Shown: positions 33,415 through 50,794, counted from the stretch's first letter. The stretch is DNA of 64,000 bases from Paramoeba atlantica (GCA_977017575.1 CDRNVI010000037.1:310001-374000), one strand, 5' to 3'. Translations and numbers: made by a program. The notes: generated by a model not told the origin, from the letters alone.

Positions 33415-33850
33415 TTTAGGTAGCGAGCTACTCTTTTACGTTTGCATTTGTACATGCATTTATATAGAACATGAGATCCCCAAAAAATTGTAAAGAACTT
33501 GAGATCCCCATGATAAGAAAAACTCTTTTACGCTGCATGTTGCGGAGCGTGTTCGTTCCTCTTTTTAAATGCACCCCTTTAAAAAATACAATGGCTAAAA
33601 AATGATGTTGTGCACATAGAAAATCATTTCAAGTTCTTCATCTTTAAACGTTTTTGAGTCCCTCATTTTTTCTTGCCGTAGTGCGAATTGAAAGCAAGTT
33701 GGCAAAAGAATAAAGGGTATTAAAAAGTCTCATAAAATACGTGTATTATCTGATTTATTAGAATAATATATTTCGCGGATTTTTGCTTACATTACATGAA
33801 CAACGGGTCCTGAAACTACCCGTACATAAAGTAACAAATTGCAAGTAACA

Positions 33851-33859
33851 TTTTTTCAG
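33851..33859 (+). promoter_or_regulatory. Putative trans-splice acceptor TTTTTTCAG, conserved upstream of paralogues A, B (39857) and C (42046)
   Basis: The same GTAACA-T-run-CAG lies ~20 nt before each ATG. Confidence 0.4.
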
Positions 33860-33878
33860 ATACGAACTCTATTCCTTT

Positions 33879-34547
33879 ATGTTGAGGTTAAACGTTTTAA
33901 CCAGCGAATCCCTGTCGATTCGTAAATCTCGCTTAGGAAGAGTCGGTCTAAATTCTCAACCTGACGAAATTATGCTATTGATGTTCATACAAGAAATTGA
34001 AACTCATCATCGCAGTTGGAAATCTTCCTGTTCACCATGTAAATGGAGTGGGGTTGTCTGTAATCCCGAAGGGAATGTGCGCTCCATATATTGGAATAAC
34101 CACAATTTACGAGGATGCAATTTACGTTGGAGACACCTTCCTCAACAATTGGCATATCTAGACTTGTCGTCTAACAAACTAAGCGGTCCTGTATCACTCG
34201 ATGAATTCCCACGGGACATGCAGACAATAAGCTTATGCGACAATAAATTTACAGGGAACTTAAAGTTTTCTGAGTGCCCTCCAATGTTAAGATCGCTGTA
34301 TTTGCACGACAACAAGTTTCAAGGCATTGTAAATCTTCAAGACCTATCCGAGCGCGTACGTTGCATTAGCCTCTCAGGGAATTCAGGTCTTTACGGATGG
34401 TATGATTCAAAAAGGTTACCCGAGGATCTCAATGTCTTTTTGCTAGACGGCACATATATATTTGAAAAGCCTTCATCTTGGCAATATTTAACTTTAGTCT
34501 GTGCAATGGGTGCACTTGCTGGAGTCACTACACTATTACGTTTATGA
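33879..34547 (+). CDS. LRR-family protein, paralogue A, with a C-terminal hydrophobic tail
   Basis: SRLGRV motif, PCKWSGVVC cap, LRRs, and tail YLTLVCAMGALAGVTTLL. Confidence 0.9.
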   Translation: MLRLNVLTSESLSIRKSRLGRVGLNSQPDEIMLLMFIQEIETHHRSWKSSCSPCKWSGVVCNPEGNVRSIYWNNHNLRGCNLRWRHLPQQLAYLDLSSNKLSGPVSLDEFPRDMQTISLCDNKFTGNLKFSECPPMLRSLYLHDNKFQGIVNLQDLSERVRCISLSGNSGLYGWYDSKRLPEDLNVFLLDGTYIFEKPSSWQYLTLVCAMGALAGVTTLLRL

Positions 34548-34992
34548 CTCCATTCGTAATCGGCCACTGTACCCTCCCAGTAAGAGATATTTGGGGTACG
34601 TCTCTACTTCGTTGAATATTCAACGAACGGGATTTTAATTTTTTTTCGAGCGAGCGTTCGATTTTTTTAACATTTTAAATTGTCTCAACGGAGCAACAAA
34701 GGTAGCGCGTGGTACTAGAAACTCTTTTTCGGCAAGTCGATCTCATGTAGATTTTTGTTGTTGTTGTTTAACCCGTTTGGAGATTCCTGTGAACGAATGT
34801 GAAACGCACGGATGAAACATGGTGTTAGATACGTCGTGTATTATTAGAAAATATAAACGGGGGACCGGGAAAACATACCTGTAACACGATAACATACCGG
34901 GGGGTATGTTATCGTGAACAGGGGTGGATAACATACCCCCCCTCTGGATTTTGGAGTTGGGGGGACAATTTTTCTTAATTGAGACTTTTTTA

Positions 34993-36796
34993 CATATGAG
35001 GGGCTGCGGGTGGGGATTCGGTGCGGTCTCGGTGCGGCGTACGCACTTATCTCAGTGCAAGAACAGAAAGTGTGGAATGGGTAGGGGGTGGGGGCAGGGG
35101 CGTAGAAGGCGAAGGCGAGGCTACATGAATCCGGACATTGTTGAAGAGGAAATATTAACAAATATTTACAAATATTAACAAATCTGTACAGTTAGTAACA
35201 AATCTACTAAAAGGAATATACGCGTGAGTTTACCAAAGAAAGGGGTAACCCTGATACACTCATTTATAACTACAAATTAATCACGAGCCTTGAACGTAAA
35301 TCTTTTTCTTTTTGGTGTACACCCCCTAGTCCCACCGGAAGCCTACCCCCTCCCCCCGCCCATAAGTAAATATAATTACGTAGCACACTTACCGGTCGAG
35401 CAGAAAATTTGGTCCACTTTTATTTGGCCCCAACAAATTTGGTCCACATAAATTTTGGTCCGACTTTATTTTTCCTTCCGCGGCTGTCCAAAATACTTTT
35501 TGACTTTATTGTCAGTCGTTTTCAAAGTTTACTAAATTTAGAACTCCTCATTAGAAATTTTTGCTTCTTTCAATCGACACTTCTTTTTTTAGTCTTCGTG
35601 TAATGTCTCAGTCTGTTGAATGGGTGCAGAAAATCTTTGATCAAGAGATTTACTCTACGCATGTAGGGTCATCACTATAACACATATAGTGAGGCAGAAG
35701 TTATAGCAATTTGTGAATTGTGTGTGACACGAAAGGTTGCTAGTATTGTGAGCTACTGGAATAGCACACAAAGCAAAAACAAACTAAAAGTACGGTCCTT
35801 CATTTTCTGGAAAACGAAAAATCTAATAACGATATCAAGCCTCGAGGGAGGCCAGGAAAATATATCTTTTTTGTTTCAATGCACGAAAAATTTGGCCCCA
35901 ATAATTTTGGTCCACATAAATATTGGTCCGACTTTTTTTGCGAGCTCGAAGGACCAAATTAAAAAAATGTCAAATTTTTTGCTCGACCGGCATTTGATTT
36001 TTTAGGCTCATAGGCAACGCCATCTATATTTTCCCTAAGCCACTCTCTGCGGCTTTCGATACCATCAACTACACCGCACCCTTTACTACATAAACACTCA
36101 CCTTCATCGCTTGTAGATTTCGGTTAAAGTAAAGCAAAATTCGCCTTTTTTGCAAAAAAAAATGCTTTACACCCTATCTAGAAATCTACCCTTGCATTTC
36201 TTAATACAGTGCCACACACTATCCTCTAATTCCATTTCTTTTGGTGATGAGTGTGTCCTTTTTCCACAGAAAACCCTTCTCGTGACAAGCCCATGGCATT
36301 GAAGCCACTGCTCGCACTATGCTTCCGTCCGGCGTGATATACGGATGAGGGTGAACTTTCTTCGACAAGCGAACCCCCGACACCCCTGGCATACCATAGA
36401 AAATAACGGAAAAAGGGTATACAATAGTCATATACAATATTATGTACGTAGATAATGTCCTTTTGTCGAAAGGAAAAATGTCAAGCTAAAAAGTCATAAG
36501 AAAAGCGAATTTTCCTTTACTTTCACCTAGATTTCAAACTTAAATTTATAATCGAATCGAAATCATACTGCGGCTGAGTGGGAAACGAACCGAACTATTG
36601 TTAGTAGAAAGGATGAAAATGATTCAGACAAAGAAACAAAGGAAAATATAGCTAGAAGCGTACACCGAATCGGAAATTCCACATAAAAATAATAAACAAA
36701 TGTAAACTTTTTACTCTTTTTATATCTCTCCCCACCGAAAATACTAACCGCGGTCTCGGTGCGGTCTCGGTGGAAGTACCCGCAGCCCCTCATGTG
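34993..36796. mobile_element. Nested TA-flanked TIR element
   Basis: TIR CA(T/C)ATGAGGGGCTGCGGGT (18/19 match), with TA on both sides. Confidence 0.7.
35392..35990. mobile_element. Nested MITE
   Basis: TIR CCGGTCGAGCA(G/A)AAAATTTG and repeated TTGGTCCACATAAA..TTGGTCCGACTTT; no clear TSD. Confidence 0.55.
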
Positions 36797-36868
36797 TAGT
36801 ACTGATCATTTTTTTGTTTTCTTATCAACATGAGCATTCAAGTACAGAGTTGCACACAAGTTAACATA

Positions 36869-37972
36869 CTGTGCGCCCCCCACTTATTTGTCGTAGTCCC
36901 CCCCCCACTTAATTGTCCTTTTTGACGAGACTGGGCAGTAGTTTGGGGGGGGGAGCAATTTTTCCCTACGAACCTCATACATACAGTGTATCAGAACCCG
37001 ATGTCAGTAAGTAGTATTGTTTGTATATACTTTCTACTTCAAGTTTTTCATATCACAATACCTAGCTATGTTTTTTTTCTTTGAAACTTAGTCCACCTCT
37101 TCCACAGAGTTTTGACGCGTCTGTGGCAGTATAAAGAGTTACTCCTGTTGTGCGCGGTTCGCTGGCTTGGTTCCAGGTTCGGTCTATGGCCAATCGGAAA
37201 ATATCCGATTTTCCAGTGTTCCATTGCAAGAGAAGTACGCTAGATAATCTTGAATCCCAATTATGGGCATGCGCCTGACTTGTACATTCGAAGAGGAGTT
37301 CCAGAGCATAATCAACTTCATACAGCGGTTTGCGTGCGATTCTGAGTACCCAAAGGAGCCGTGCAATCCAGCGTACTGCCGTACGAACAGTAAAGTCATC
37401 ATAAGTAGACTTTGGTGTCACCCACGATGAGACCGTTTCACTACGAACTCGCCAAAAAAGAATGTCCTTCTTCCATTCGTATTCAACTCCCAAAAAAATG
37501 GCCTTCAGACTTTCGCAGAATGGTTTTGGTTCTTTCCAGTACGCCTGTAAAATTTTGGAATCCTCCCTGCGAACAACCATTCCCCACCACCACCACTCCC
37601 TTCTTCCCTCACTGCGAACAGTCATTTCCCACCACCATCCCGGTCGTCTCGCCCATGCCGCCTTGATGCTTGGGTTACAATATGGCCTCCTGCCCCACGA
37701 GTCGGTGCTCTATCAAACCCCATACCTTATAGCGGTTTGACAAAAGAAACTACTACTACTATAAACTTTACTAGTACAGGAAAGGTAGAAAAACTACTCA
37801 TACGATAAAGATACCGTTTCTGTAAAGCCAACTTTATCCGAACGCTTTGGAGATTCCGAAAATAATGAAAAAAGTTTGGGACTTTTGTTTCATCTAACCA
37901 AATAAATTGACCCCCCCACTTAATTGTCCTTTTTTTGAAAACGTGGTGACAAATAAGTAGGGGGGGGCACAG
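36869..37972. mobile_element. Nested TA-flanked TIR element carrying a retroelement fragment
   Basis: TA|CTGTGC(G)CCCCC..ACTTATTTGTC ... GACAAATAAGTAGGGGGGGGCACAG|TA. Confidence 0.7.
37062..37625 (-). pseudogene. RT-thumb/RNase H fragment of a DIRS-type (VIPER/TATE-like) retrotransposon
   Basis: AIFLGVEY (RT FLG motif) and LYTATDASKLCGRGG (RNase H TDAS..GxG motif); a stop codon lies upstream. Confidence 0.6.
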
Positions 37973-38289
37973 TACCTGTAACAGCATAACATACCTGTAA
38001 CAGCATAACATACCTGTAACAGCATAACATACCTGTAACACGATAACATACCGGTGGGTATGTTATCCTGTAACACCGTTTAGGTGCAAGATTTTTTGGG
38101 AAAAACAAAGTTTTGTTATTTAAGGGATAACACTTGTTTTGGTAACTTGCATTTAAAAAATCATTTGAAAGTAAATATATAATATAGCGCGCGTAGAATA
38201 ATACATACCTGGTCTGTACCTGGAGATGTACCCCAAGGCTTTACACGATACCGAGTAAAACCACCGAAAAACTCAGTTCGACCAAAGTA

Positions 38290-39057
38290 CACCCCTGGGC
38301 AGCTTCATTTACCCCCCCACAGGTCTTGTATTTTGTTCGATTTCGGAAATATTTGGTATGGGACTGTTTTTCGCTCCGATCGTCTCGAATCCGCGGTCGT
38401 TTTCACTCGAGCGACCTTGATTTGCTCCGAGACCTTAAAATTTTTGTCCAAAAAGTCAATTTTTTTTGCCCACCCTAGAAAAATCTACTTTTTTTCGGGT
38501 TTTTCCTCAATGGTCAAACGGTATCGGGCTTCTTCCCTCCCGAATCAGCGTATTTCACCAGAAAGGCGAACTCTCATCATAGCACGCTACAAGGAACTAA
38601 AATCCCTACGTGCTGTAGCTAATGAGCTCAAAATCTCCAGGAATGGAGTAAGATATTGGGTGCGGCACTTTGAAAAGATGTTTTATCAGGAGTACATGTC
38701 GATAAATTAAGAAATCTATTTAAAGACTTCCGCAAACGACTTAAATTGGTGGTAGAAAAGAAAGGTGATCACATTGGTTATTGAATACGTATTCAGCGTC
38801 TTTTTTGCGTTCTCTAAGCGTGATTTACATTTTTAAAAACGTAAAAAATTATTTAAAAGCAAGAAAAAAATTCAAAAAAAAAAGTGTACACCCTCAAAAA
38901 TTGTCTAGTCATTTTAGTAAAAAAAATATTATTCCAATCATGAAAAGGACCGCGGATTCGAGACGATCGCAGCGAAAAACAGTCCCATACCAAATATTTC
39001 CGAAATCGAACAAAATGCAAGACCTGTAGGGGGGGTAAATGAAGCTGCCCAGGGGTG
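38290..39057 (+). mobile_element. Internally deleted Tc1/mariner element, 768 bp
   Basis: TA|CACCCCTGGGCAGC with a ~115-bp TIR. The HTH N-terminus (MVKRY..SLRAVANELKISRNGVRYWV, from ~38510) is joined to a Tc1 C-terminus in another frame (KLRNLFKDFRKRLKLVVEKKGDHIGY*, ending ~38783). Confidence 0.9.
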
Positions 39058-39261
39058 TATAAAAAAACGTTGCTGTGGACGTAGCTCGGAAAGGTGGGGG
39101 TCGCTAAACCCCAACATTGTGAGATCACGAAAGTATACTGTATATCTAACAATGTCCCTGACCTATAATGTACAAAACACTATGCACAAACGGATCTATA
39201 TACATGTATAAAAGGAGTTAAAAATGAAAAAGAATAGACCAGGTATGACACGCAATTTTTT

Positions 39262-39591
39262 TTACTCTTCCTCACTGGAAAGAGTTTCTTGGCTAGCTTC
39301 AGAAAAGCTGCAGAAACTATCGCTGAGATCATTCATGATTTCAATGTCCTCGCATCCGTAGAAATCGCGGATGCACTCAAGTATATTAATAAAACGCACC
39401 TGCCGTGCTTCTTTGCGCTCTGATTTCCCATACCCGTACTTTACGCATTTCAAGGCCGCATTGCGGCGCAGATCCATTGAAGACATACCATAATTGTAGT
39501 GTTGTTGCTTTATCCAATGTTTGATTGTCCGGTGCGCAGCCTCCGCATGGTTTGTATGATGCCCTTTTAGGGTCACGAATTCTTTCTCCAG
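39262..39591 (-). pseudogene. C-terminal fragment of a Merlin/IS1595 (ISXO2-like) transposase
   Basis: KEFVTLKGHHTNHAEAAHRTIK matches FV...G.HTNxIE..W..LK; the end FINILECIRDFY is also typical. Confidence 0.75.
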
Positions 39592-39876
39592 AAGTGAGCT
39601 TCGCTCACAGTTGGGCCTTGCTCTCAGACGGGGGCTTTTGCCTCCAGAAGTGGGCTTCGCTGGCAGAATCCTAGAAAATTTCGGTGAAAAAAAATCAAAA
39701 CCCGTTCGTTGAATCGTTCAACGAAGTAGAGACATAGCCGATATTTGGCCTTTTTCGCTAAAAAACGATTCCCTTGTGATGGGGGACTATGGTATTTCAT
39801 TGCCAAAGGTCTTGAAACCACCCAAAGCAACAAATTACAAGTAACATTTTTTTTCAGTTTCAAACTCTATTCCTTT

Positions 39877-40545
39877 ATGTTGAGGTTAAACGTTTTAACC
39901 AGCGAATCCCTGTCGATTCGTAAATCTCGCTTAGGAAGAATCGGTCTAAATTCTCAACCTGACGAAATTATGCTATCGATGTTCATACAAGAAATTGAAA
40001 CTCATCATCGCAGTTGGAAATCTTCCTGTTCACCATGTAAATGGAGTGGGGTTGTCTGTAATCCCGAAGGGCAAGTGCGCTCTATGTTTTGGAATGACCA
40101 CAATTTACGAGGATGCAATTTGACTTGGAGGCACCTTCCTCAACAATTGGCATATCTAGACTTGTCGTCTAACAAACTAAGCGGTCCTGTATCACTCGAT
40201 GAATTCCCACGGGACATGCGGGCGATAACTTTATCCAACAATAAATTTACAGGGAACTTAAAGTTTTCTGAGTGCCCTCCAATGTTAAGATCGCTGTATT
40301 TAGACGGGAACAAGTTTCAAGGTATTGTATATATTCATGACCTATCCGAGCACTTATGTCGCATCAACCTCTCAGGGAATTCAGGTCTTTACGGATGGTA
40401 TGATTCAAAAAGGTTACCCGAGGATCTCAATGTCTTTTTGTTAGATGGCACATATATTTTTAAGAAGCCTTCATCTTGGCAATGTTTAACTTTAGTCTGT
40501 GCAATGGGTGCACTTGCTGGAGTCACTACACTATTACGTTTATGA
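39877..40545 (+). CDS. LRR-family protein, paralogue B (mosaic of A and C)
   Basis: 222 aa from the ATG at 39877; near-identical to A at both ends and to C in the middle. Confidence 0.9.
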   Translation: MLRLNVLTSESLSIRKSRLGRIGLNSQPDEIMLSMFIQEIETHHRSWKSSCSPCKWSGVVCNPEGQVRSMFWNDHNLRGCNLTWRHLPQQLAYLDLSSNKLSGPVSLDEFPRDMRAITLSNNKFTGNLKFSECPPMLRSLYLDGNKFQGIVYIHDLSEHLCRINLSGNSGLYGWYDSKRLPEDLNVFLLDGTYIFKKPSSWQCLTLVCAMGALAGVTTLLRL

Positions 40546-40585
40546 CTCCATTCGTAATCGGCTACTGTGCCCTCCCAGTAAGAGA

Positions 40586-41452
40586 TACAAGTTATCGTAA
40601 CAAAAGTCGTGGCAACAAAAGTTGTGTCAACAAAAGTCGTGTTAATGCAAAAAAGGTGGTGAGGAACAAAAGTATGTTAAAAAATAGATTTTGTTTTCTT
40701 TATTTATAAAATAGATGCATATTTGCTCACCCCCCTTGAAGCAAAGGTCTTGGGCGACCTAAATTCCATAGAGACCCCAAAGCAGTACCCTTCTTCCCTA
40801 GAGGAAAAGGTCATGGTGGCACAAATGGCGAAAAGCTTGGGTCCGAGCAAAGCTTCTCGCGAATCGGAAAGAGTTCATGGTACGTTTCATTCAGTTTCCC
40901 TTTTTTCAAAATACTTATCTCACTACAACGAAAGTAAACGTAAAGGTCTACCCGAAAACGAGCGCTACTTTAAATCAAAATCTATGGGAAGGTCCACAAT
41001 ACTCACTGACCTTGAGTAGAAGCTCGTAAGAAAGCGAAGAAAAAAAGTAAGAAAGTATCTCACCCAGAAATTGAAAAACTGAAGAAAATTTCTAGAAGTG
41101 CAACACTCTTAAAACGGTCACCTTTGATAGTCCGAGCGGCTAAAGAGCGCGAGTTCCGCTACAAAATGTCACTCGATTGATTGGTAATTGTCTTTTGTAA
41201 ATTATAATATATTTTTTGGAATCTTCTGTAAATGGGCCCGTGCTCTAATAAATATTTTACTGCGTTTGAAGTTTGCAATTTTCTTTGTGAAATGAGTGAC
41301 TAAATGAAACTTTTCTTCAATGGGCGTGTTTTTTTAGCAAACAGTAAGAATTGGCAAAGTTTTGTAAAAAAGTGAACATATGTTGTGGCAACATAAGTTG
41401 TGTCAACATAAGTCGTGTTAATTAACATGACTTTTGTTGACATAACTTAATT
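40586..41452 (+). mobile_element. Degenerate TIR element with a pogo/CENP-B-like HTH remnant (40723-41180)
   Basis: Ends share AAGTTAT..AACAAAAGTC(G/A)TG in inverted orientation. The ORF remnant MGRSTILTDLE*KLV contains a stop. Confidence 0.45.
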
Positions 41453-41480
41453 TCCCCCCTGTAGTTAATAGAAGAAAACT

Positions 41481-41572
41481 AAACCATGTTCCAGGACAGT
41501 ATACCCATGCCCACTTAGTATACCTACTAGGTATACTAGGTATACCTAGTAGGTATCCTGGAACATGGTTTA
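41481..41572. repeat. ~90-bp palindromic mini-element
   Basis: TAAACCATGTTCCAGGA ... TCCTGGAACATGGTTTA, with an internal TATACCTA(C)TAGGTATA palindrome. Confidence 0.7.
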
Positions 41573-41922
41573 CAGTGCGGAACATTATTACGGGACACCT
41601 TAATTAAGGGACACCCCCTTTCTGGTCAAAAGTGTCCAGTAATTAAGTGTCCCTTAGCTTTGACCTGTGAAATGATCTGTGAAATGTAGTGAGTGATTGT
41701 ACTAAAGGTTCTGTTGCTATATTTTTTGTTATTTTTATACACTGCTTATTTGGGCGTGTAAAACTGTTTTGCGGAGAATACGCCGGCCTAGCCCGATCCT
41801 ACACACTTCGTTCCAGGAAGTGGGAGCGAAACTCACTCCAAGACCCAAGTGTTCCGTAATTGAGTTGTCCCGTAATTAACGTGTCCCGTAATTAACGTGT
41901 CCCGTAACAAAATCCCGCACTG
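41573..41922. mobile_element. MITE, Tc1/mariner (pogo-like)
   Basis: TA|CAGTGCGG..TTACGGGACAC ... GTGTCCCGTAAC..CCGCACTG|TA, with subterminal GTGTCCCGTAATTAAC repeats. Confidence 0.8.
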
Positions 41923-42065
41923 TATATTTGGCCTTTTTCGCCCAAAACCGATTCCCTTACCGTGGGGGACTACGAGTATTTCATGGCCAAAGGTCTTGAA
42001 ACTACCTATACACAAGGCAACAAATTGCAAGTAACATTTTTTTCAGTTTCAAATTATATTCCTTT

Positions 42066-42734
42066 ATGTTGAGGTTTAACGTTTTAACCAGAGAATCCCC
42101 ACTGATTCGTAAATCTCGCTTAGGAAGAGTCGGTCTAAATTCTCAACCTGACGAAATTATACTATCGATGTTCATACAAAAAATACGAACCTACCATCAC
42201 AGTTGGAGCTCTTCCTGTCCACCGTGTAAATGGAGTGGGGTTGTCTGTAATCCCGAAGAGCAAGTGCGCTCTATGTTTTGGAATGACCACAATTTACGAG
42301 GATGCAATTTGACTTGGAGGCACCTTCCTCAACAATTGGCATATCTAGACTTGTCGTCTAACAAACTAAGCGGTCCTGTATCACTCGATGAATTCCCACG
42401 GGACATGCGGGCGATAACTTTATCCAACAATAAATTTACAGGGAACTTAAAGTTTTCTGAGTGCCCTCCAATGTTAAGATCGCTGTATTTAGACGGGAAC
42501 AAGTTTCAAGGTATTGTATATATTCATGACCTATCCGAGCACTTATGTCGCATCAACCTCTCAGGGAATTCAGGTCTTTACGGATGGTATGATTCAAAAA
42601 GGTTACCCGAGGATCTCAATGTCTTTTTGTTAGATGGCACATATATTTTTAAGAAGCCTTCATCTGAGCAATGTTTAACTTTTGCCTGTGCAATGGGTGC
42701 ACTTGCTGGAGTCACTACGCTATTACGTTTATAA
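42066..42734 (+). CDS. LRR-family protein, paralogue C
   Basis: 222 aa, with the same architecture as A and B. Confidence 0.9.
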   Translation: MLRFNVLTRESPLIRKSRLGRVGLNSQPDEIILSMFIQKIRTYHHSWSSSCPPCKWSGVVCNPEEQVRSMFWNDHNLRGCNLTWRHLPQQLAYLDLSSNKLSGPVSLDEFPRDMRAITLSNNKFTGNLKFSECPPMLRSLYLDGNKFQGIVYIHDLSEHLCRINLSGNSGLYGWYDSKRLPEDLNVFLLDGTYIFKKPSSEQCLTFACAMGALAGVTTLLRL

Positions 42735-43134
42735 CACCACATCCATTTTTGTTTTTTGATATGTTATCTAATTACTTCTCCGCTACTTAGGAGTGCGCCG
42801 ACTATGGACGCTTGGATTCTTAAATAGGGTGGAGGGGTCGAGCTAAGAAAAAAATATCTTTGATCTACAAAACCGAACCCATAAGTAAATAGGACTCTTA
42901 AGTAGGGGGCGAAGAGGGTCGAAATGATTTCGCAGATCAAGACGGTGATAATAGTGTGAACAATGAAAAGCGAAAGTGTCTTTGTGAAAGCTAACCGTCA
43001 GGGGAGTTTTTGATTTTAATACATGCAACTCTAATCTGTGACTCTTTAACCTGCTATCTCTCAATATTTTTAATATTGCTTCCGAATGTAACGGGATTTG
43101 TGGGCTTGTTCTTCAGATTATTTATTCGTACATT

Positions 43135-45939
43135 ATGTCTCACTCGGGACCTACAGTTGACTTTCTGATTCCCCCACGCCATGAGTTGCGTGTGCACTGC
43201 GACATCAATACTCTCCCATTAGGACCCCACTGTTTCTCATTCCACAAAAGCGAGACACATCAAAGCCATAATTCCTCTAAATCAATCGATCGTCCCGCAA
43301 ATGAAAGTGTTAAAACTTTATCACATCTCCAAAAGAACACGCCTGCCTCCGGAAGCACGGAGCTACGAGAGTATGCAGCTGATTACATTGCCCCTGCCTT
43401 ACATCTGACCATTCTAAAACCACGACGCAGTGCGCATTCATCCTCTATCGGAAACCCCCAAAAAACGACAGAAGATGATGACTACTCCTCCTGGGCGGAA
43501 AACGAAGACACTGTCTCTTCTCCACGCTGCGCAACCCAACAACAAACCAAAGCTGCTGGATTAAAAAAACGACCCCATGAAAAAGAAAGATCAGCCTCTG
43601 TTTCTTCTCTCCCCAAGACTTCGGTTTCTTCTTCTGTTTCTTCTTCTCCAGCCTCTCCCAGCTCTTCTTTATTCTCCACGGCCGAAATTTTCGGTGCCGA
43701 GCTGTTTCTCCAACACCGCTATCTTTTCTCCTGTGAGTGTTCCCACCTTGGGGTGTATTCCCCGACAGGGTGTGTGGCGCGTGTAGGGCTCACGACCCCC
43801 TACCCCACCCCGCGCTCCCTCTTTGGGGAAAAACAACAACGAGAGACCCACCCCTTAGATCCACGAAATTTTTGTGCCGTCCTCCCGCATTCCGACACGC
43901 CTGTGTTTGTGGATCTCCACAGTGTGTTGCACAGTGCCCGAAGACGCGCCCAGCAAGGGGAGGAAAAAGCAAAAGGGCTGGCTTCGCTGGCCTCGTTTGC
44001 GGTGGTGGGAAAGGAAAGGGAAAAACAAAAGGAAAAGGTACCCAGGAGGGAAAGGATGATCCAGGAGGATGAAGGAAATGAAGAAACTACACGAAAAAGT
44101 GTAACGCAAACGGTTTCATCAAGTTTTGGATCGATCTCCTCGAATGCGAATGTTTCTTCTATTTCTACAAATCTAACATCTTCATCCTCTGCTCCATTCT
44201 GTGGTCCACGCGTGATGATTTGTGGAAGTCCATGCAGCGGGAAACGAACCCTCTCACAAGCTTTACTCAACTACGGTGTTCGCGCGGGATATCCTTTGAC
44301 CTATGTCGACCTTGACCCCTCCCACCCGCTTTTAGGATTGCCCGAAAGCATGAGCGTAAGTCATCTTAACGCGACACTTCACCCCAGTCGTATTTTTACG
44401 CATTCTCCTGCATTTTCTGTTTTCTATGGATTTGCACATCCACAGGGAAATTGGTCGTTTTATGTGCAGTGTGTTCGTCGACTGGCATCCGTTACGCGGC
44501 AATATTTTGTAAAACATGCAAAAGAAAAGGAGAGATGGGGAGGTCTTGTGGTGCGCATTCCGTCATTGGATCTTTCCACTCCGTTAGAGGATGAGGAAAA
44601 GCATTCCTCTATTTCTGGATTGAGATCGGCAATTTCCGAAACAGAAGAGTCTCCTCCAGCAATTGACTTTTCTGCCCCCCTCACGGTGCGGTCATTTCTC
44701 TCGTTAGTCCTTCACAGTTTTGATATTGACACGGTTTTTTGTGTGGGCAATGAACAACTGATACATGAGGTAAAGCGATGCTCACCTAAACCCGTACGTA
44801 ACGTTCTGGACTCGGCAAACGCATCCAATGCCTCCGTGTCTTTACCTGAAACGGAAGAGGACTTTTCTCTCCAGAATATGCTCTATCAGGACCACTGCGT
44901 AAATCCCAACGGGATGACTGATATTTCGCTTTATGCCGTCGAGCCTCTTCGTGGACGTCATGTTCCTTGTGACGTTCGTGAAAAAACATCGGAGGGAGCG
45001 TATCCGCAAGAATCGGATCAAAACACATCTCTTTTTTCACCCTTTGTGTTGGAAGAGGGAAGGACAGCTTCATCTACTCCCCCCAGTCTTCCTCTTCTAC
45101 CCTCGGGGAAACCATCACAAGTCCTTCCGCTTTCTATTCTTAAACCTCATCTCTCTCGCATTTATGACACGATGGGACTCGTCACTGTCCCGACAGTGAA
45201 TGGAACACTTTACTATCCCAGTTCCATCATCTCGTTTCTTCGTAAATATTTTTACGGCACCTTACGATGGAGCAAAGAGAAAAAAATAGCAAAGGATACA
45301 ATCAAAGTGGAAAAGGACTCAAAAATAGAGGAACAATCACAACCACAGTTTATTTCTCAGGGAAAGCATGCGTTATCTAGGACAGAAAAGTCTCATCTGG
45401 ATTCTGATCGCCTTCTGTCGTGTATATTTTGTGCTCACTCTCATCTCCGTACCCTTTCGAGTTTTTCTCATCGATTGGTTCGAGTTGGAGCGTCTCATCG
45501 GTTAGATTCAATTGAGGGGATTCTTCCTCTTGGTGAGACCTCCTTGCTCGAGGCGATTGGAGTAGAAGAGATCTCGGCGTTTAGTGTAAATCTAATGGGA
45601 CGAATCCTCTCGTTTGTGCAGGTAAAACGGGAGGAAGGATCTTCCAAGCGAAAGAAACGTGAAAATATGGATAAACCATCATCTTCCGAGTTACAAAGTT
45701 CAGCCACGAAATCAGAGATTCGAACTGACACAGACCTCACCTTATGTGAAGACAGAGAAGACAAAATGGTCTCTCTCGAAGGTTTTTCTCAACGCCTGCG
45801 AAATTCCCGAGTGTTGGGGTATGGATACATCACAGGTGTTGATCTCTCAAGCCAGAGTTTGGAGATTATCACAGCTTTCCCAAGTTGGCCTGGATATTCG
45901 GACGTGTATTATTTGGTCGGGGAAAGGAATTATTTATAA
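43135..45939 (+). CDS. CLP1: CLP1 polyribonucleotide 5'-kinase / mRNA 3'-end cleavage factor, with long insertions
   Basis: AEIFGAEL N-domain, PRVMICGSPCSGKRTLSQALLNYGVRAG P-loop, TYVDLDP, and C-terminal VLGYGYITGVD. Confidence 0.88.
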   Translation: MSHSGPTVDFLIPPRHELRVHCDINTLPLGPHCFSFHKSETHQSHNSSKSIDRPANESVKTLSHLQKNTPASGSTELREYAADYIAPALHLTILKPRRSAHSSSIGNPQKTTEDDDYSSWAENEDTVSSPRCATQQQTKAAGLKKRPHEKERSASVSSLPKTSVSSSVSSSPASPSSSLFSTAEIFGAELFLQHRYLFSCECSHLGVYSPTGCVARVGLTTPYPTPRSLFGEKQQRETHPLDPRNFCAVLPHSDTPVFVDLHSVLHSARRRAQQGEEKAKGLASLASFAVVGKEREKQKEKVPRRERMIQEDEGNEETTRKSVTQTVSSSFGSISSNANVSSISTNLTSSSSAPFCGPRVMICGSPCSGKRTLSQALLNYGVRAGYPLTYVDLDPSHPLLGLPESMSVSHLNATLHPSRIFTHSPAFSVFYGFAHPQGNWSFYVQCVRRLASVTRQYFVKHAKEKERWGGLVVRIPSLDLSTPLEDEEKHSSISGLRSAISETEESPPAIDFSAPLTVRSFLSLVLHSFDIDTVFCVGNEQLIHEVKRCSPKPVRNVLDSANASNASVSLPETEEDFSLQNMLYQDHCVNPNGMTDISLYAVEPLRGRHVPCDVREKTSEGAYPQESDQNTSLFSPFVLEEGRTASSTPPSLPLLPSGKPSQVLPLSILKPHLSRIYDTMGLVTVPTVNGTLYYPSSIISFLRKYFYGTLRWSKEKKIAKDTIKVEKDSKIEEQSQPQFISQGKHALSRTEKSHLDSDRLLSCIFCAHSHLRTLSSFSHRLVRVGASHRLDSIEGILPLGETSLLEAIGVEEISAFSVNLMGRILSFVQVKREEGSSKRKKRENMDKPSSSELQSSATKSEIRTDTDLTLCEDREDKMVSLEGFSQRLRNSRVLGYGYITGVDLSSQSLEIITAFPSWPGYSDVYYLVGERNYL

Positions 45940-46248
45940 ACTTGCCGCCATTTCTTGTGAAAATACTTCCGTTGGAGCTTTCCACCAAAGTCATTTGGTG
46001 AATTTATCTGTCATGCGTAGAAACATTCGACAAGCCGTCTGGCTTGAGGTCCACAATCAGGCGATTTGAATGTCTTATTCTCCATATTTGCTTATCATTT
46101 TTTCTGCCCAATTCAACATCACTTTCTTTTCATAATTCCAGAACGAACCGCGTAAACTTCAAACGTATCCAAAGTACAGACTCACGCAACTATTTTCAAC
46201 ATCAAATCAAGCCTATTTTCTCCTCCTCTACCTCTCCCCTCCTTCCCC

Positions 46249-48129
46249 ATGTCGGTTCCCTCCCACTCCACCTACCGGTACCTTATGCCGGGCCGATCTC
46301 GATTCGAGAACTGGCGAGGGGTTTTCTACCCTTGTCGTATGTCGCCTCGAGCTCGACTGGAACATCACATCCGTACCACGCGGAGCACGAACGAAAAAAT
46401 CAAAGCCTTCGAGGCGCAACGATCCGCGATCGAGTCCCGAGAAAAACAACACTGGTGGGAAAACGACATGGTCGATGAGACACCCCCTCCATCCGTATCC
46501 CATGAGGAGAAAACCAAAAAAGCCTGGCAGCATTACATTTCCCTATGCGAGTGCAATGATTACGGGTTCCCGGGGTACGCCATGAACCATTTCGATGCGA
46601 TTCTATCGCTCCATGGTGATTTCATGCCCCTACGCAACGGGGGGGATGCCCCTCCGTCTTCTCTACTCCCTCTAACCGCGTTCCCCAGCCTCGTGGAAAG
46701 TTTTCGCGCACGAAAACTCGAGACCTACCTTTGTGAGACCCAGTGCCACTACGACACCACGGAGGCGATTAAAAAAATGGGGGAGTATCAAGGCACCGAA
46801 CGTGTCGACCACGCCAGCTATGTCGTGGAGTGTTGTATGGATTTACTTCGTAGGGAGAGAGGAAGCGGTACTCTCCCCACTCGCTCTACTACCTCGAAAC
46901 TACAAGCTTCACAAGCTTCAAAAACGGAGCTTTCCACCTCTTTTTCTTCTTCTTCTTCCCTGCAAAACAGTAACAACAAAACCCTGCTGCTCCATCTCTT
47001 CAACGCGCTCATGTCGGTGATGCTCTCCGGGGGCTTTGCCAACTGCCAGCGTGTGTTTGCCCAAACCTACGACGCGCTGGGGGTCCAAAAGGTCTGCCCG
47101 AATCTCACTACTTATCTTCACACCATCCGGGCCCTCAGCCTGTGTGGGGAACTCACCCAGGCCCAGTCTCTGTTCCACTGGCTGCGCTCGAAATGCCCCG
47201 AAAATTTATCGTTTACTCTTTTTACTTTAATGTTTGAATGTTACCGGGAGAATAGAAATCCCGAGGCCGCGGATGCGCTGTGGGCGGATTGCGTGGCCTC
47301 GAACGCGTCCTCGAGGCTTTCGTTAGAGGCCGCGGAGCTGTATCTACGGGATATTGTCGATCGGGCCTATACCCCGTTGGCCGGGGATATGGCTTATTAC
47401 GGTCAACCGAATCATGCGGAGATGAAGAAAATTCCGCTTTTGGTGGATACGCTTCGGGAAAATGGTCTTCCTCCGGAATTCCTCTCTCCGGTGGTTAAAT
47501 TTCATATCAACGACGCGTTGATTTGTTACCGTATCCCGGAGGGGAGGAAGTACGCCTGGGCGCGATCAAAGTCTCAGTTTTCGTTTTTAAACATGAGGCG
47601 CGCGGAGCAGTATGTGGATGACCTTCTGGAGCTCACCAGTGGGGGCGGGATGCGCGGGTTGCCGCAGGAAAAGGACCAAAAAGGGAGTAGCGGGATTGGA
47701 CCGTATTATGGCCGTCATGGGGGAAAGAAGACCTGGGAGAGTACCCCGGCGGATTCGTTGTTTTACCAGTTTAAGGTGGAGGAACAAAAGAAGGACACCC
47801 GGATGGAGAGTAAGAATACGATTTCCCGGACGGATTTGTATGAGAGGGGTGCGCATTGGATGGCGGAGAGCCCGCAGACACGGTACGATCATTTGTATGC
47901 GCAACATAAGGTTGATTTTCGTCGTCTAGGGGTGAGAAGGCATTTGGACCCGAATGCGGCAGGCTCTGAGGAGGATATGGCCCGGGATGCGGCTGTGGTG
48001 GCCTCGGTGACGAAAATGGGGCAGCGCTTACGCCGGCAAAACCCTCGGATGCGGTCTGAGGGGGGAGGGGGGAGAGGAGATAGGGGAGAAGGGATGAGTG
48101 TGTCCTATTTGGAATTCGAAAAGGATTGA
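46249..48129 (+). CDS. PPR-containing, probably mitochondrial RNA-binding protein, 626 aa
   Basis: Tandem PPR-like units LFNALMSVML.., PNLTTYLHTIRALSLCGELTQAQSLF and LFTLMFECYRENRNPEAADALW. Confidence 0.7.
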   Translation: MSVPSHSTYRYLMPGRSRFENWRGVFYPCRMSPRARLEHHIRTTRSTNEKIKAFEAQRSAIESREKQHWWENDMVDETPPPSVSHEEKTKKAWQHYISLCECNDYGFPGYAMNHFDAILSLHGDFMPLRNGGDAPPSSLLPLTAFPSLVESFRARKLETYLCETQCHYDTTEAIKKMGEYQGTERVDHASYVVECCMDLLRRERGSGTLPTRSTTSKLQASQASKTELSTSFSSSSSLQNSNNKTLLLHLFNALMSVMLSGGFANCQRVFAQTYDALGVQKVCPNLTTYLHTIRALSLCGELTQAQSLFHWLRSKCPENLSFTLFTLMFECYRENRNPEAADALWADCVASNASSRLSLEAAELYLRDIVDRAYTPLAGDMAYYGQPNHAEMKKIPLLVDTLRENGLPPEFLSPVVKFHINDALICYRIPEGRKYAWARSKSQFSFLNMRRAEQYVDDLLELTSGGGMRGLPQEKDQKGSSGIGPYYGRHGGKKTWESTPADSLFYQFKVEEQKKDTRMESKNTISRTDLYERGAHWMAESPQTRYDHLYAQHKVDFRRLGVRRHLDPNAAGSEEDMARDAAVVASVTKMGQRLRRQNPRMRSEGGGGRGDRGEGMSVSYLEFEKD

Positions 48130-48380
48130 AAGAGCGGTGGGGAGGTTAACGACAAGGACTTCGGTTTCGGTGTGTAAAGGTGGCTCATTCTTTTGTTTTT
48201 AATATTTGTCTTTATAATCACTTTCTTTGCGTATTCTGGTTCACTCTTTACACGTTTTGTTTGGCTTCTATCGGTATCATTATCTCCCGTAAATACCATA
48301 AGAAAGACATTTTGTTTATCTGTTACATTTTCTTCCTCTTCCTCTACCCTTGAATAGCGGGTAGGGTTTCACACATTCAT

Positions 48381-48851
48381 ATGTCGGAAGATCCGAAAAA
48401 AACGTCCCACATTGCCAAGCGCAGCCAGCGTGAGCTCACACGAATTCATACCCCTTACTCTGTTGACTTGGCCATTAACACAGACATTCCTTACGTTATT
48501 GTGATTCGCTTTGGTCGTGAAAACACGTCGGACTGCGCAGAAATGGACGAAACACTGCGCCGAATTGTTCATCTAGTACGTAATTTTGCAGAAATTTACG
48601 CCGTTGATATGGATGTCATTTCGGATTTCACTGAGATGTATGAGCTTGAGGATGACGTGAACGTCATGTTTTTTTATCAGAACCGTCACATCCAAGTTGA
48701 TTGCGGCAGTGGGGTACACTCTCGAATTCATTTCCCTATCCATGAGCCACAAGAAATGGTAGATTTGATTGAGATCGTGTTCCGCGGAGCGCAAAAAGGT
48801 CTTGCAAAGGTGGAAAGTGTTCAGCAGTATGCTACACGACATCGCTTTTAG
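48381..48851 (+). CDS. DIM1: DIM1/TXNL4A-like U5 snRNP thioredoxin-fold protein
   Basis: VIRFGRE..CAEMDETL..VRNFAEIYAVD..DFTEMYEL..MFFYQNRHIQVDCGSG..EIVFRGAQKG. Confidence 0.92.
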   Translation: MSEDPKKTSHIAKRSQRELTRIHTPYSVDLAINTDIPYVIVIRFGRENTSDCAEMDETLRRIVHLVRNFAEIYAVDMDVISDFTEMYELEDDVNVMFFYQNRHIQVDCGSGVHSRIHFPIHEPQEMVDLIEIVFRGAQKGLAKVESVQQYATRHRF

Positions 48852-49041
48852 GACTTTCTTCTTTATTTCTTTACCGCGCGACATTTCTCCGCACTTCAAC
48901 ACTGTTCTCCATCTTTCCACGCAACGATTTTTAGAAATCTTTAAAAAACTCATTTTGCTGCACAGTGCACAAATACCTTCCATACAAAATCTAAACGTGC
49001 TAATCTTTCTTTCATATCGTATCTTCTTTTCTTAGTCTTCC

Positions 49042-50226
49042 ATGAGCGGGGTGGGACGCCATCACCATGCCCGACACGTAGTGCAGCAAATGAACGAAAA
49101 GCAGGTCCCCTTACTTCATTCCTCCACAGAGTGCCTTGCTCGGTGTCTCGAGTGCCGCGGAAACAATCTCTGGAAAGTGGAGTACTGGCGCCCAAACGCA
49201 ACAAAGGAAACCAAAAAAACACATTTCTCACCAGATGACGAGGAATATGAAAAAAATAATGATGCATTATTTCCCATCGCGCTCGCAAAGCTTTCTCGAC
49301 GACTGCACAAAGTGATTTGGTTACAACGGGGGGACTTAGTTGTGTTGGAAAGTGTATCGGATGATATTTCACAATCCGGGGTCTCTGCTGAGTGTTGTTC
49401 TGAGGCTCTGAAAGAAACACCCATCTCTGTGAGATCTCGCAATACGAATGTTACATTAGATGCCTCGAATTTTCACTTAAATGGGTCTTCCTTCCATCCT
49501 CCATTCAGTACACAAAGCTGTCATGTTGAAACCGAGTGCAACTCTGAACAAGTAGATGTAGTACGGGAATCTTACTCCAATTCGGATGCAGATCGTTCTA
49601 ATAAGGACAGCAGCAGCGGAAAAAAGCGACGCGCCCGTAACTTTGGTGACTCTGGATTCACATCGAGTTTCGCTGAAACATCTCAGGCTCGCTCTTGTTC
49701 AGTTCTAGCAGAGCATAAACATGATGCGTCGCAGGTTGAGTGTGCATTCTCGAACGGATCTAAGTTCTCCTTTTTTATTACACGCAAGCTTTCGCTTGTT
49801 CAGCGTAAAACATTGCGCAAAGAAGCTATATCCTACCGTACTGACGTGTCTTCTGAAATAAGAGGTTCGGAAGGACAAACAACTTTAAAATACACCTCTT
49901 CTCCGTTCTTGTTGCAGATACAAAAACAAACGCACGCTGTCCCACCTCCATGTGCAGATACACTACCCCATAGTAAATTTATAAGCGCTAGTGCAAATAT
50001 TAACACTTCGCATGACACCGATCTTGGCGTCACATCATTGCTACATTTTCTCAGCCTTGGTTGCTTTGATAATTGTGATAGTCGGACCTTATCACAGGAC
50101 CCTAAGTATCCAACCACGACGCACAATATGTCTTTGCAAATGGGAAACAGGTCCATGGGATGGGATCTGGACACATCATCCTCACCTTCTGAAAATGAAG
50201 AAGAGGACAAAGTGTTTCTTGATTAA
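49042..50226 (+). CDS. eIF1A/EIF1AD-like S1(IF1)-domain protein with long insertions
   Basis: ARCLECRGNNLWKVE...LAKLSRRLHKVIWLQRGDLVVLE. Confidence 0.75.
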   Translation: MSGVGRHHHARHVVQQMNEKQVPLLHSSTECLARCLECRGNNLWKVEYWRPNATKETKKTHFSPDDEEYEKNNDALFPIALAKLSRRLHKVIWLQRGDLVVLESVSDDISQSGVSAECCSEALKETPISVRSRNTNVTLDASNFHLNGSSFHPPFSTQSCHVETECNSEQVDVVRESYSNSDADRSNKDSSSGKKRRARNFGDSGFTSSFAETSQARSCSVLAEHKHDASQVECAFSNGSKFSFFITRKLSLVQRKTLRKEAISYRTDVSSEIRGSEGQTTLKYTSSPFLLQIQKQTHAVPPPCADTLPHSKFISASANINTSHDTDLGVTSLLHFLSLGCFDNCDSRTLSQDPKYPTTTHNMSLQMGNRSMGWDLDTSSSPSENEEEDKVFLD

Positions 50227-50494
50227 TTTAACTGCAACAATGCAATATAAACCCCCCACAGCGAATAAGTCACCCCCCACTTTTTTTTGTACAACGAGGC
50301 TTAGGGGGGTTTCGGCACCACTTTTTGGTTCAAAATTCTAAGATCTCCAAGTTCCTGCTATTTTGAGGTCTCTAAAAATACATCCAATCCAAAAAATATG
50401 ATCGCTAAAATTCATAAACCCCCCCGCGCACATTAGTTACATAGGATTTTGGTAACTAATAGGTCATATGTAACTAATAAGTGATTTTTCAATT

Positions 50495-50790: not shown

Positions 50791-50794
50791 AAAC

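What the first reader, a model, noticed from the sequence alone, without database searches (positions are those of the whole stretch)
33879..42734. Three LRR paralogues differ mainly at the exposed beta-strand positions, like variable receptors
Seen: A versus B/C differ in clusters on the LxxLxLxxN strands (RSIYWNN/RSMFWND, QTISLCD/RAITLSN, SLYLHD/SLYLDG, RCISLSG/CRINLSG), while the intervening scaffold is mostly identical. Known: these positions form the concave ligand-binding face that diversifies in plant LRR receptors and lamprey VLRs. Inference: a membrane-anchored recognition repertoire under diversifying selection in a kinetoplastid, possibly at a host-symbiont or pathogen interface.
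Basis: partly seen in the sequence, partly recalled or inferred. Interest (0 to 1): 0.78.

Follow-up and report, generated by a model that had tools for sequence, protein, structure and literature searches.

The report
Tandem LRR genes patched by gene conversion
Three neighbouring genes for small leucine-rich-repeat proteins in a kinetoplastid do differ mostly on their likely binding face, but the pattern fits ordinary repeat-protein constraint plus copying between the genes, and positive selection is not shown.

Summary
Genes A (33879-34547), B (39877-40545) and C (42066-42734) each encode a 222-residue plant-type LRR protein. In the LRR domain, A differs from B/C at 12 of 30 concave-face x positions against 9 of 108 other positions (P=1e-4).

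The inferred diversifying selection is not supported.
- dN/dS at the strand positions is 0.8-1.4 depending on the method, and never significantly above 1.
- Silent differences cluster with the replacements.
- The 77 codons between the patches have no differences at all, silent sites included, so scaffold identity reflects recent gene conversion.
- Every variable site has two states, arranged in blocks. B is an A-C-A mosaic. The second haplotype's allele of C carries A's first-strand patch.
- C differs from A/B mainly in the non-LRR N-terminus, with a similar dN/dS.
- Other young clusters of the family give 0.4-0.7 at concave positions, and alleles are conserved there.

The genes belong to a family of at least 200 small SERK-like LRR proteins. 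An earlier report of this scan described the family on other DNA of this genome. None of the three has a signal peptide. They end in a hydrophobic helix, so they may be tail-anchored with the LRR facing the cytosol.

The parts
33879..34547 (+). Gene A. It encodes 222 aa: a low-confidence N-terminus (1-17), a cap helix and LRRNT_2-like CxCxWxGVxC motif (29-61), six 23-24-residue LRRs (67-196) and a C-terminal hydrophobic helix (200-221).
   Evidence: ORF and translation. Pfam LRRNT_2 25.6 bits and LRR_1 21 bits. AlphaFold2 mean pLDDT 88. Foldseek best hits are SERK2/BIR3 ectodomains.
39877..40545 (+). Gene B, an A-C-A mosaic. Codons 1-64 and about 201-222 are A-like; nt 195-600 of the CDS are identical to C.
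   Evidence: Nucleotide differences. Test on the longest identical runs, 0 of 20000 simulations reached the observed value.
42066..42734 (+). Gene C. It differs from A/B mainly in codons 4-53 and 201-207. Its allele on haplotig C91 carries A's LRR1 patch.
40071..40476 (+). A 406-nt tract of B that is identical to C (42260-42665). It is a recent gene-conversion tract, not shared in full by the second haplotype's C allele.
   Evidence: B and C differ at CDS index 193 and 600 only at the tract borders. C' carries 13 differences from C. Logan contig depth is about 4-5 times single-copy depth for the B/C-type middle.
34071..34133 (+). Diverged patch 1 in A (codons 65-85): the LRR1 strand and following loop.
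   Evidence: Two-state table. The second haplotype's C allele shares A's state for codons 65-74, which implies a conversion tract of 27-86 nt.
34221..34241 (+). Diverged patch 2 in A (codons 115-121). All five concave x positions of LRR3 differ, with 7 nt changes within 18 nt.
   Evidence: In run X3 a contig carries A-type LRR1 and codons 82-85 together with B-type LRR3, a third mosaic.
34302..34370 (+). Diverged patch 3 in A (codons 142-164): LRR4 positions 7-8, convex positions 152-154 and the LRR5 strand.
34443..34487 (+). Diverged patch 4 in A (codons 189-203). The differences are mostly silent, plus E196K and Y203C.
34476..34541 (+). The C-terminal hydrophobic helix of A (residues 200-221), a candidate tail anchor. 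B and C have the same helix. The 47%-identical paralogue at 14763-15422 also ends in a hydrophobic tail of different sequence.
   Evidence: AlphaFold2 helix 200-221. Kyte-Doolittle 16-residue window 1.7-2.2. Family alignment.
33806..33878 (+). Conserved 5' flank of A. The equivalents are 39741-39876 for B and 41924-42065 for C. It holds a poly-T tract followed by CAG about 20 nt before the ATG, a likely trans-splice acceptor. Homology between the copies ends about 75-140 nt upstream and at most 45 nt downstream of the CDS.
   Evidence: Alignments. BLAST spans.
34481..34700 (+). The only part of A present on the second-haplotype contig C91, at 100% identity. Upstream of it C91 carries dispersed repeats and ends after 3.1 kb.

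Best explanation
A, B and C are a young tandem triplet within a very large, lineage-restricted family of about 200-residue, single-domain, plant-type (SERK-like) LRR proteins of a non-trypanosomatid kinetoplastid.

Each protein is an LRR solenoid whose concave beta-sheet is the probable partner-binding surface. The three have no signal peptide and end in a hydrophobic helix. I infer that they are tail-anchored with the LRR domain on the cytosolic side; this is about even odds against another topology.

The pattern of differences is a gene-conversion mosaic. Long and short conversion tracts (406 nt between B and C; 27-86 nt from A into the second haplotype's C allele) keep most of the coding sequence identical, silent sites included. 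Older divergence survives in a few patches. The patches coincide with the strand codons because those x positions are the least constrained in any LRR, so they diverge fastest. Diverged stretches may also be poorer substrates for conversion, or be kept by selection.

Inside the patches the replacement-to-silent ratio is below or near 1. That indicates weak constraint at exposed positions, not demonstrable positive selection.

Shown: the mosaic, the enrichment on the concave face, the dN/dS values and the fold. Inferred: topology, binding function and why the patches persist.
For: Mosaic structure:
- All variable sites among A, B, C and the haplotig alleles B' and C' have two states, arranged in blocks: codons 1-53 {A,B,B'}|{C,C'}; 65-74 {A,C'}|{B,C,B'}; 82-203 {A}|{the rest}; 201-223 {A,B,B'}|{C,C'}.
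- B and C share an identical 406-nt run. The three longest identical runs sum to 476 nt against a simulated mean of 223, and 0 of 20000 simulations reached that.
- Between the patches, 77 codons (51 silent sites) have no differences. Within the patches pS=0.31 and pN=0.155.
- Silent-only differences lie within 3 codons of a replacement in 7 of 9 cases, against 3.6 expected (P=0.02). For A vs C it is 10 of 13 (P=0.007).

dN/dS values:
- Concave positions: 0.77 (NG86), 1.06 (LWL85), 1.40 (ML).
- Rest of the LRR domain: 0.35-0.52.
- N-terminus, A vs C: 0.72-1.05.
- The Fisher test of concave replacements against domain-wide silent changes gives P=0.33.

Family context:
- Concave dN/dS is 0.42, 0.72 and 0.65 in three other young clusters.
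- Twelve allelic pairs pooled show 2 replacements against 8 silent changes at concave codons.
- By register position no value exceeds 1.04.
- Long identical runs also occur in other tandem arrays of the family.
- The family gives at least 204 matches, and all 150 scored candidates of 3198 matched.

Protein features:
- The fold model has pLDDT 88, and the best structural matches are SERK2/BIR3/SOBIR1 ectodomains.
- No N-terminal hydrophobic segment; a C-terminal helix is present.
- The first ATG follows a conserved poly-T/AG site.
Against: - Power is low. The A/B/C clade offers in effect two independent sequence states, 30 concave codons and about 17 substitutions. A true dN/dS of 2 or more at a few sites cannot be excluded, and the ML point estimate at concave codons is 1.4.
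- The coincidence of surviving patches with binding-face codons is also what selection against homogenising the binding face would produce.
- Whole-gene dN/dS (0.6-0.9) is higher than in the other family clusters (0.25-0.5).
- Patch limits were drawn after seeing the data.
- The concave class was assigned from the motif register and the model's strands, not from computed solvent exposure.
- The cytosolic topology rests only on the absence of a recognisable signal peptide, and kinetoplastid signal peptides can be atypical.
Confidence: 0.64

Rival explanations
1. The concave-face residues of a membrane-anchored receptor repertoire are under diversifying selection. Gene conversion homogenises everything except the strand patches, because variants that lose binding-face diversity are selected against. 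Short-tract conversion additionally shuffles alternative strand cassettes into new combinations.
For: - Replacements are enriched 7-fold in odds on concave positions.
- All five x positions of LRR3 differ, and many changes alter charge (Q115R, D121N, H143D, R161C/C162R).
- The ML dN/dS at concave codons is 1.40 against 0.49 for the rest.
- The patches occur in at least three combinations across haplotypes and samples.
- Silent divergence is raised at concave codons (0.265 against 0.127), as expected for linked sites around maintained differences.
Against: - No estimate is significantly above 1.
- Measured against the local (patch) silent divergence, the ratio is about 0.5-0.8.
- The N-terminal non-LRR block has the same ratio.
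- LRR2 and LRR6 strands carry no replacements.
- Other young clusters give 0.42-0.72, and alleles of a dozen family genes are conserved at concave positions.
- There is no signal peptide, and most family members have no membrane anchor.
Confidence: 0.17
2. Relaxed constraint on redundant copies. After tandem duplication the three genes are partly dispensable and drift. Exposed positions and the N-terminus accumulate changes nearly neutrally, and one copy (A) is already being lost in one haplotype.
For: - Whole-gene dN/dS is 0.6-0.9, against 0.25-0.5 elsewhere in the family.
- The C vs C' allelic comparison gives 0.95, with replacements such as W174L and P135S.
- On the second-haplotype contig only the last 67 nt of A are found, next to dispersed repeats. 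No other copy of A's 5' part exists in the assembly.
Against: - All five copies keep intact 222-codon frames without stops or indels despite 26-64 differences.
- Non-concave LRR positions have dN/dS of 0.35-0.5, significantly below 1 (P=0.004).
- B and B' differ by one silent change only.
- The C91 contig ends inside repeats, so the missing part of A' may be an assembly gap.
Confidence: 0.15
3. Assembly or polishing artefact. The identity of B and C, and the mosaic blocks, arise from collapsed or cross-polished repeats rather than from biology.
For: The three copies are 88-95% identical at the DNA level. The alternative haplotype assembly breaks in this region. The ENA assembly of the locus is 99.93% identical to the window, so it is not independent.
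Against: - Contigs built independently from short-read runs contain the B/C-type middle at about 4-5 times single-copy depth, and the A-type segment at about single-copy depth.
- The haplotig carries B' differing from B by a single silent change, and a distinct C'.
- The flanks of each copy are unique.
Confidence: 0.02

Closest known systems
Plant SERK/BAK1, BIR and SOBIR1 ectodomains (short plant-specific LRR domains with an LRRNT_2 cap)
   Same: The size and fold match: an N-terminal cap helix with a CxWxGVxC-type motif, followed by five to six 23-24-residue repeats of the form LxxLxLxxNxFxGxh. Foldseek gives E=1.7e-8 to 1e-6, TM 0.62-0.76 and 21-28% identity. Pfam LRRNT_2 and LRR_1 are above their cut-offs for A and B.
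   Different: There is no signal peptide and no kinase domain. The membrane helix is the very C-terminus. The cap cysteines are often replaced in other family members. The family is expanded to hundreds of copies in a kinetoplastid. Similarity to plant proteins is at the generic LRR level, so common descent of this particular architecture is not shown.
Plant LRR resistance-gene clusters (receptor-like proteins and NLRs) that evolve by duplication and sequence exchange
   Same: Both are tandem paralogues with patchwork sequence exchange and variation concentrated at the x positions of LxxLxLxx.
   Different: In the plant cases dN/dS above 1 at those positions has been reported; this is from my own knowledge and was not checked here. 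In this locus it is not shown. These proteins are also far smaller and lack the other domains.
Lamprey variable lymphocyte receptors
   Same: Both are small LRR-only proteins with membrane attachment and diversity on the concave sheet, and the variants look like cassettes.
   Different: VLR diversity is assembled somatically from flanking donor cassettes and the proteins are secreted or GPI-linked (from my own knowledge). Here the variants are germline alleles and paralogues. No donor cassettes for the A-type patches were found in the genome. There is no LRRCT cap and no signal peptide.
Leishmania PSA-2/GP46 and other kinetoplastid surface LRR proteins (and the PSA-like part of bodonin in Bodo saltans; PMC4728078)
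   Same: These are also LRR multigene families of kinetoplastids, with plant-like repeats.
   Different: PSA has a signal peptide and a GPI anchor (PMC4728078). The genes here have no signal peptide. The word-based profile search found no named kinetoplastid homologue, only unnamed ENA contigs and plant LRR kinases. No direct sequence comparison with PSA was run.
The small-LRR family already reported by this scan on other DNA of the same genome (s1-396162)
   Same: It is the same family: about 200 aa, a conserved SRLG[KR]VR..SLP.E leader before the cap helix, and no secretory signal.
   Different: This report concerns one young tandem triplet that has a C-terminal hydrophobic tail, and its conversion mosaic.

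Membership tests
Leucine-rich repeat proteins, plant-specific type with LRRNT_2 cap | Tandem LxxLxLxxN(x)L repeats of 23-25 residues that form a solenoid with a parallel beta-sheet on the concave side | tested here: met
   Six repeats are read from the sequence. AlphaFold2 places strands at 67-71, 93-95, 116-118, 139-141, 162-164 and 186-188, with pLDDT 88. Pfam LRR_1 scores 21-26.4 bits against a cut-off of 20.6.
Leucine-rich repeat proteins, plant-specific type with LRRNT_2 cap | An N-terminal cap matching Pfam LRRNT_2 | tested here: met
   A scores 25.6 bits and B 22.7 bits against a cut-off of 20.7. C, at 19.3, is just below.
Plant-type LRR receptor-like protein or co-receptor (extracellular LRR) | An N-terminal signal peptide that places the LRR domain outside the cell | tested here: not met
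   The N-terminus MLRLNVLTSESLSIRKSRLGR has a maximum 10-residue hydropathy of 0.2-0.6. The first ATG follows a conserved poly-T/AG site, and the upstream frame holds no other ATG. No dedicated signal-peptide predictor was available.
Plant-type LRR receptor kinase | A cytoplasmic kinase domain after the transmembrane helix | tested here: not met
   The protein ends 1-2 residues after the hydrophobic helix. There is no kinase hit in Pfam.
Tail-anchored membrane proteins | A single hydrophobic helix at the extreme C-terminus and no signal peptide | tested here: met
   The helix spans 200-221 of 222 residues, with hydropathy 1.7-1.9 over 16 residues. Actual membrane insertion and the target membrane cannot be tested with these tools.
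Lamprey VLR-like assembled receptors | Donor cassettes elsewhere in the genome that supply the variable LRR segments | tested here: not met
   A whole-genome DNA search with gene A found only A, B, C, B', C' and the A' 3' fragment. All other matches fall in a dispersed repeat downstream of the CDS. Very short donors could be missed.
Gene family under diversifying selection at the ligand-binding face | dN/dS significantly above 1 at concave x positions | tested here: not met
   The values are 0.77, 1.06 and 1.40 by three methods, with Fisher P=0.33. Pooled by register position across four clusters, the maximum is 1.04. Power is low, and no site-model likelihood test could be run.
Gene-conversion mosaic among tandem paralogues | Identical tracts, silent sites included, longer than chance allows, and block-wise switches in which copies share each state | tested here: met
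   The evidence is the 406-nt identical B/C tract, the zero differences in 77 inter-patch codons and the two-state block pattern. For the sum of the three longest identical runs, 0 of 20000 simulations reached the observed value.

The most novel reading that the evidence does not exclude
Short-tract gene conversion works as a germline cassette shuffler. Each LRR strand exists in two alternative versions. These are exchanged among the three tandem genes and between haplotypes; at least three combinations are seen in the assembly and in other samples. This would create combinatorial binding surfaces kept by balancing or diversifying selection. That would be a resistance-gene-cluster-like recognition system in an early-branching kinetoplastid, possibly acting inside the cell, since the proteins have no signal peptide.
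Probability: 0.15. Interest if true: 0.7.

Novelty: new member of a known kind. Interest (0 to 1): 0.33.

Why it matters
The case shows how a pattern that looks like receptor diversification can arise without demonstrable positive selection. Here the identical scaffold and variable strand positions come from gene conversion plus the ordinary constraint architecture of LRRs. Silent sites are what tell the two explanations apart.

The wider family is more interesting than the triplet. It comprises hundreds of SERK-like, mostly anchor-less and signal-less LRR proteins in a kinetoplastid far from the trypanosomatids. No function is described for it in the literature I could search. If the patch shuffling proved to be selected, it would be a protist example of germline combinatorial diversification of an LRR binding face.

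Tried and rejected
- **Collecting all paralogues.** The family analysis therefore rests on 55 members from 66 short loci and the window, not the whole family.
- **Site-model likelihood tests (M7/M8, MEME).** No such program was available. I used Nei-Gojobori, LWL85 and pairwise ML estimates, plus parsimony counts pooled by site class. YN00 failed on most subsets.
- **Single-sequence protein search.** It found only the window's own gene B. The profile search found seven unnamed ENA proteins and then generic plant LRR kinases. The ENA contig that holds the locus is the same haplotype at 99.93% identity, so it adds nothing.
- **Donor cassettes for the A-type patches.** None was found.
- **Reads.** Only Logan contigs were available, fragmented at the repeats. 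They cannot show absence, expression or transcript ends. The run guessed to be RNA (X5) gave one B/C-like 525-nt contig and may in fact be DNA.
- **Literature.** Searches for this family in kinetoplastids, bodonids, Perkinsela and Prokinetoplastina found nothing specific.
- **Ideas considered but not supported by any test.** The conserved SRLG[KR]VRG|AS leader could be a mitochondrial presequence or processing site, or a PEXEL/RxLR-like export motif. An earlier report of this scan reads most of it as the cap helix. In the model, residues 1-17 have pLDDT below 50 and 18-28 are of intermediate confidence.
- **Complex prediction.** Not used, because no partner is proposed.
Full report
**What is there**

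The region holds three intact 222-codon ORFs on the + strand: A at 33879-34547, B at 39877-40545 and C at 42066-42734. The ORF listed from 39745 for B starts at a TTG. The first ATG is at 39877, and it aligns with the ATGs of A and C.

Homology between the copies covers the coding sequence, about 75-140 nt upstream and at most 45 nt downstream. The shared upstream stretch ends in a poly-T run and CAG about 20 nt before the ATG, which looks like a trans-splice acceptor.

The proteins are 89% (A/B) and 83% (A/C) identical. Pfam finds LRRNT_2 and LRR_1 above their cut-offs.

An AlphaFold2 model built on 45 family members has mean pLDDT 88. It shows a cap helix (29-37), six concave strands (67-71, 93-95, 116-118, 139-141, 162-164, 186-188) and a terminal helix (200-221). 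The best structural matches are the short plant LRR ectodomains SERK2, BIR3, BIR2 and SOBIR1 (E down to 1.7e-8, TM 0.62-0.76).

All four quoted strand pairs are present. In the LRR domain, A and B differ at 12 of the 30 concave x positions and at 9 of the 108 other residues (Fisher P=1.1e-4).

This holds only for A against B/C. B and C are identical over 406 nt of the LRR domain. C differs from A/B mainly in codons 4-53, which lie before the repeats, and in the tail.

**Mosaic structure**

The assembly is diploid-like. Contig C91 is collinear with window 34481-52000 at 98.3% identity and carries the alleles B' and C'.

Across A, B, C, B' and C' every variable site has exactly two states, and the states switch partners in blocks:

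| Codons | Copies sharing one state | Copies sharing the other state |
|---|---|---|
| 1-53 | A, B, B' | C, C' |
| 65-74 | A, C' | B, C, B' |
| 82-203 | A | B, C, B', C' |
| 201-223 | A, B, B' | C, C' |

So B is an A-C-A mosaic, as another note on this window also says (s1-389666). C' has received A's LRR1 patch through a tract of 27-86 nt.

The conversions are recent enough to differ between haplotypes. C' keeps six private differences inside the tract that C shares exactly with B.

Contigs built from other public runs of the same organism add more evidence:
- The B/C-type middle stands at about 4-5 times single-copy depth.
- An A-type segment stands at about single-copy depth.
- In run X3 a third combination appears: A-type LRR1 and codons 82-85 together with B-type LRR3.
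- These are contigs, so they show presence only.

Long identical runs also occur between tandem neighbours elsewhere in the family.

**Selection tests**

| Comparison | Region | dN/dS |
|---|---|---|
| A vs B, A vs C | whole gene | 0.58-0.63 (NG86), 0.83-0.90 (ML) |
| A vs B | 30 concave codons | 0.77 (NG86), 1.06 (LWL85), 1.40 (ML) |
| A vs B | rest of the LRR domain | 0.35-0.52 |
| A vs C | N-terminal 61 codons | 0.72-1.05 |

Concave replacements per site, measured against domain-wide silent changes per site, give a ratio of 1.3. This is not significant (P=0.33). The rest of the domain is significantly below 1 (P=0.004).

The silent sites decide the matter:
- The 77 codons between the four patches have no differences at all, including about 51 silent sites.
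- Within the patches pS is 0.31 and pN is 0.155.
- Silent-only differences lie within three codons of a replacement in 7 of 9 cases, against 3.6 expected (P=0.02). For A vs C it is 10 of 13 (P=0.007).

Scaffold identity is therefore due to recent homogenisation, not to purifying selection alone. The patches look like older divergence under weak constraint. The patch limits were drawn after seeing the data, so pS inside them is inflated, but the ratio is hardly affected.

**Family context**

The genome holds at least 204 matches to a profile of these proteins. All 150 scored candidates of 3198 matched. The window alone contains about eleven members, all on the + strand.

I recovered 55 members from the loci that could be fetched.
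- Across 33 non-redundant members, column entropy peaks at positions 2, 3, 5, 7, 8, 10 and 23 of the repeat. This is the usual LRR pattern.
- In three other young clusters, concave dN/dS is 0.42, 0.72 and 0.65, against 1.34 by the same counting method for A/B/C.
- Twelve allelic pairs show 2 replacements against 8 silent changes at concave codons, a ratio of about 0.07.
- Pooled by register position, the highest values are 1.02 (position 8) and 1.04 (position 10).

So concave positions are the least constrained in the family, but nothing shows positive selection. Within a locus they are conserved.

**Localisation**

A, B and C have no hydrophobic N-terminus. Of the 55 members, 8 (three gene lineages) have a C-terminal hydrophobic tail, 4 have a hydrophobic N-terminus, 2 begin with MGC, and the rest have none of these.

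The 47%-identical neighbour at 14763-15422 keeps a hydrophobic tail of different sequence. This suggests the tail is functional in this subfamily.

The simplest reading is a tail-anchored protein with the LRR domain in the cytosol. This is inference only. The cap cysteines are often replaced in other members, which fits a domain that does not depend on disulfides.

**Organism and relatives**

- All genes in the window lie on one strand.
- HSP60 is at most 69% identical to anything in the database. The best named hits are trypanosomatid HSP60 at about 62%.
- The nearest clusters in the ESM Atlas are small LRR proteins labelled Euglenozoa and Discosea.
- An earlier report of this scan calls the organism Perkinsela-related (s1-396162). 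I did not test that.
- A second ENA assembly holds a tandem array of longer relatives of 350-500 aa.
- I found no paper describing the family.

**Verdict**

This is an LRR recognition-type domain with variation on its concave face, in a kinetoplastid, with a likely membrane anchor. A surface location is doubtful, and nothing links the genes to a host or symbiont interface.

The best explanation is a gene-conversion mosaic laid over ordinary LRR constraint. Power is low, so selected shuffling of strand cassettes remains possible at roughly 15%.

Noticed in passing
window 34481 (codon 201 of A); contig C91 end, L035/L036: The second-haplotype contig matches the window only from 34481 onward. Upstream of that point it carries about 3.1 kb of dispersed repeats and then ends; these include a roughly 910-nt element that also occurs at window 9231-10126. 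No second copy of A's first 200 codons exists in the assembly. A may therefore be hemizygous or interrupted in one haplotype, or the haplotig may simply break there.
   Followed up: partly
window 4234-4252, inside the LRR gene 3667-4338: A spliced-leader-like motif (TTGTTTCTGTACCTTGTTG) sits where this gene's reading frame departs from its allele on contig C103, which continues as an LRR protein of 277 aa. The near-identical motif CAGTTTCTGTACCTTGTTG occurs about 790 times on both strands of the genome. This fits the earlier report of retroelements that insert into LRR codons (s1-403548).
   Followed up: partly
window 50795-63997: There is an 18-bp satellite (consensus TTTTTTGTAAAGATCGAG) of about 733 copies at 86% matches, with 30% G+C and strong GC skew. 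It runs to the end of the window. The haplotig C91 carries the same array.
   Followed up: partly
window 38288-39059: A pair of 118-bp inverted repeats (38288-38405 and 38941-39059, about 96% identical) flanks an ORF with a weak HTH_23/HTH_28 match (38333-38710). This is probably a small Tc1/mariner-like remnant, and it contributes to the longer A-B spacer.
   Followed up: partly
window 10582-12489: A 635-aa ORF matches the hAT dimerisation domain (E=1.1e-6).
   Followed up: partly
family-wide; e.g. window 19873-20484, L055:1495-2319: Nearly all family members share the motif S-R-L-G-[KR]-V-R-[GA]-x-S-L-P-x-E-[FY] just before the cap helix, after a short variable leader. Two members begin with MGC, a possible dual-acylation signal. 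The role of the motif is unknown.
   Followed up: partly
L072 (ENA ERZ25071330, 1.06-Mb contig): A different assembly holds a tandem array of at least seven longer relatives (350-500 aa) of the same LRR family. The family therefore exists in at least one other organism.
   Followed up: no
Read-laying table, run X2 against window 34304-34362: In the deepest run only B/C-type contigs cover the LRR4-5 patch, at about 5 times single-copy depth, and no A-type contig is laid. The A-type patch may therefore be absent in that sample. Contigs cannot prove absence.
   Followed up: no
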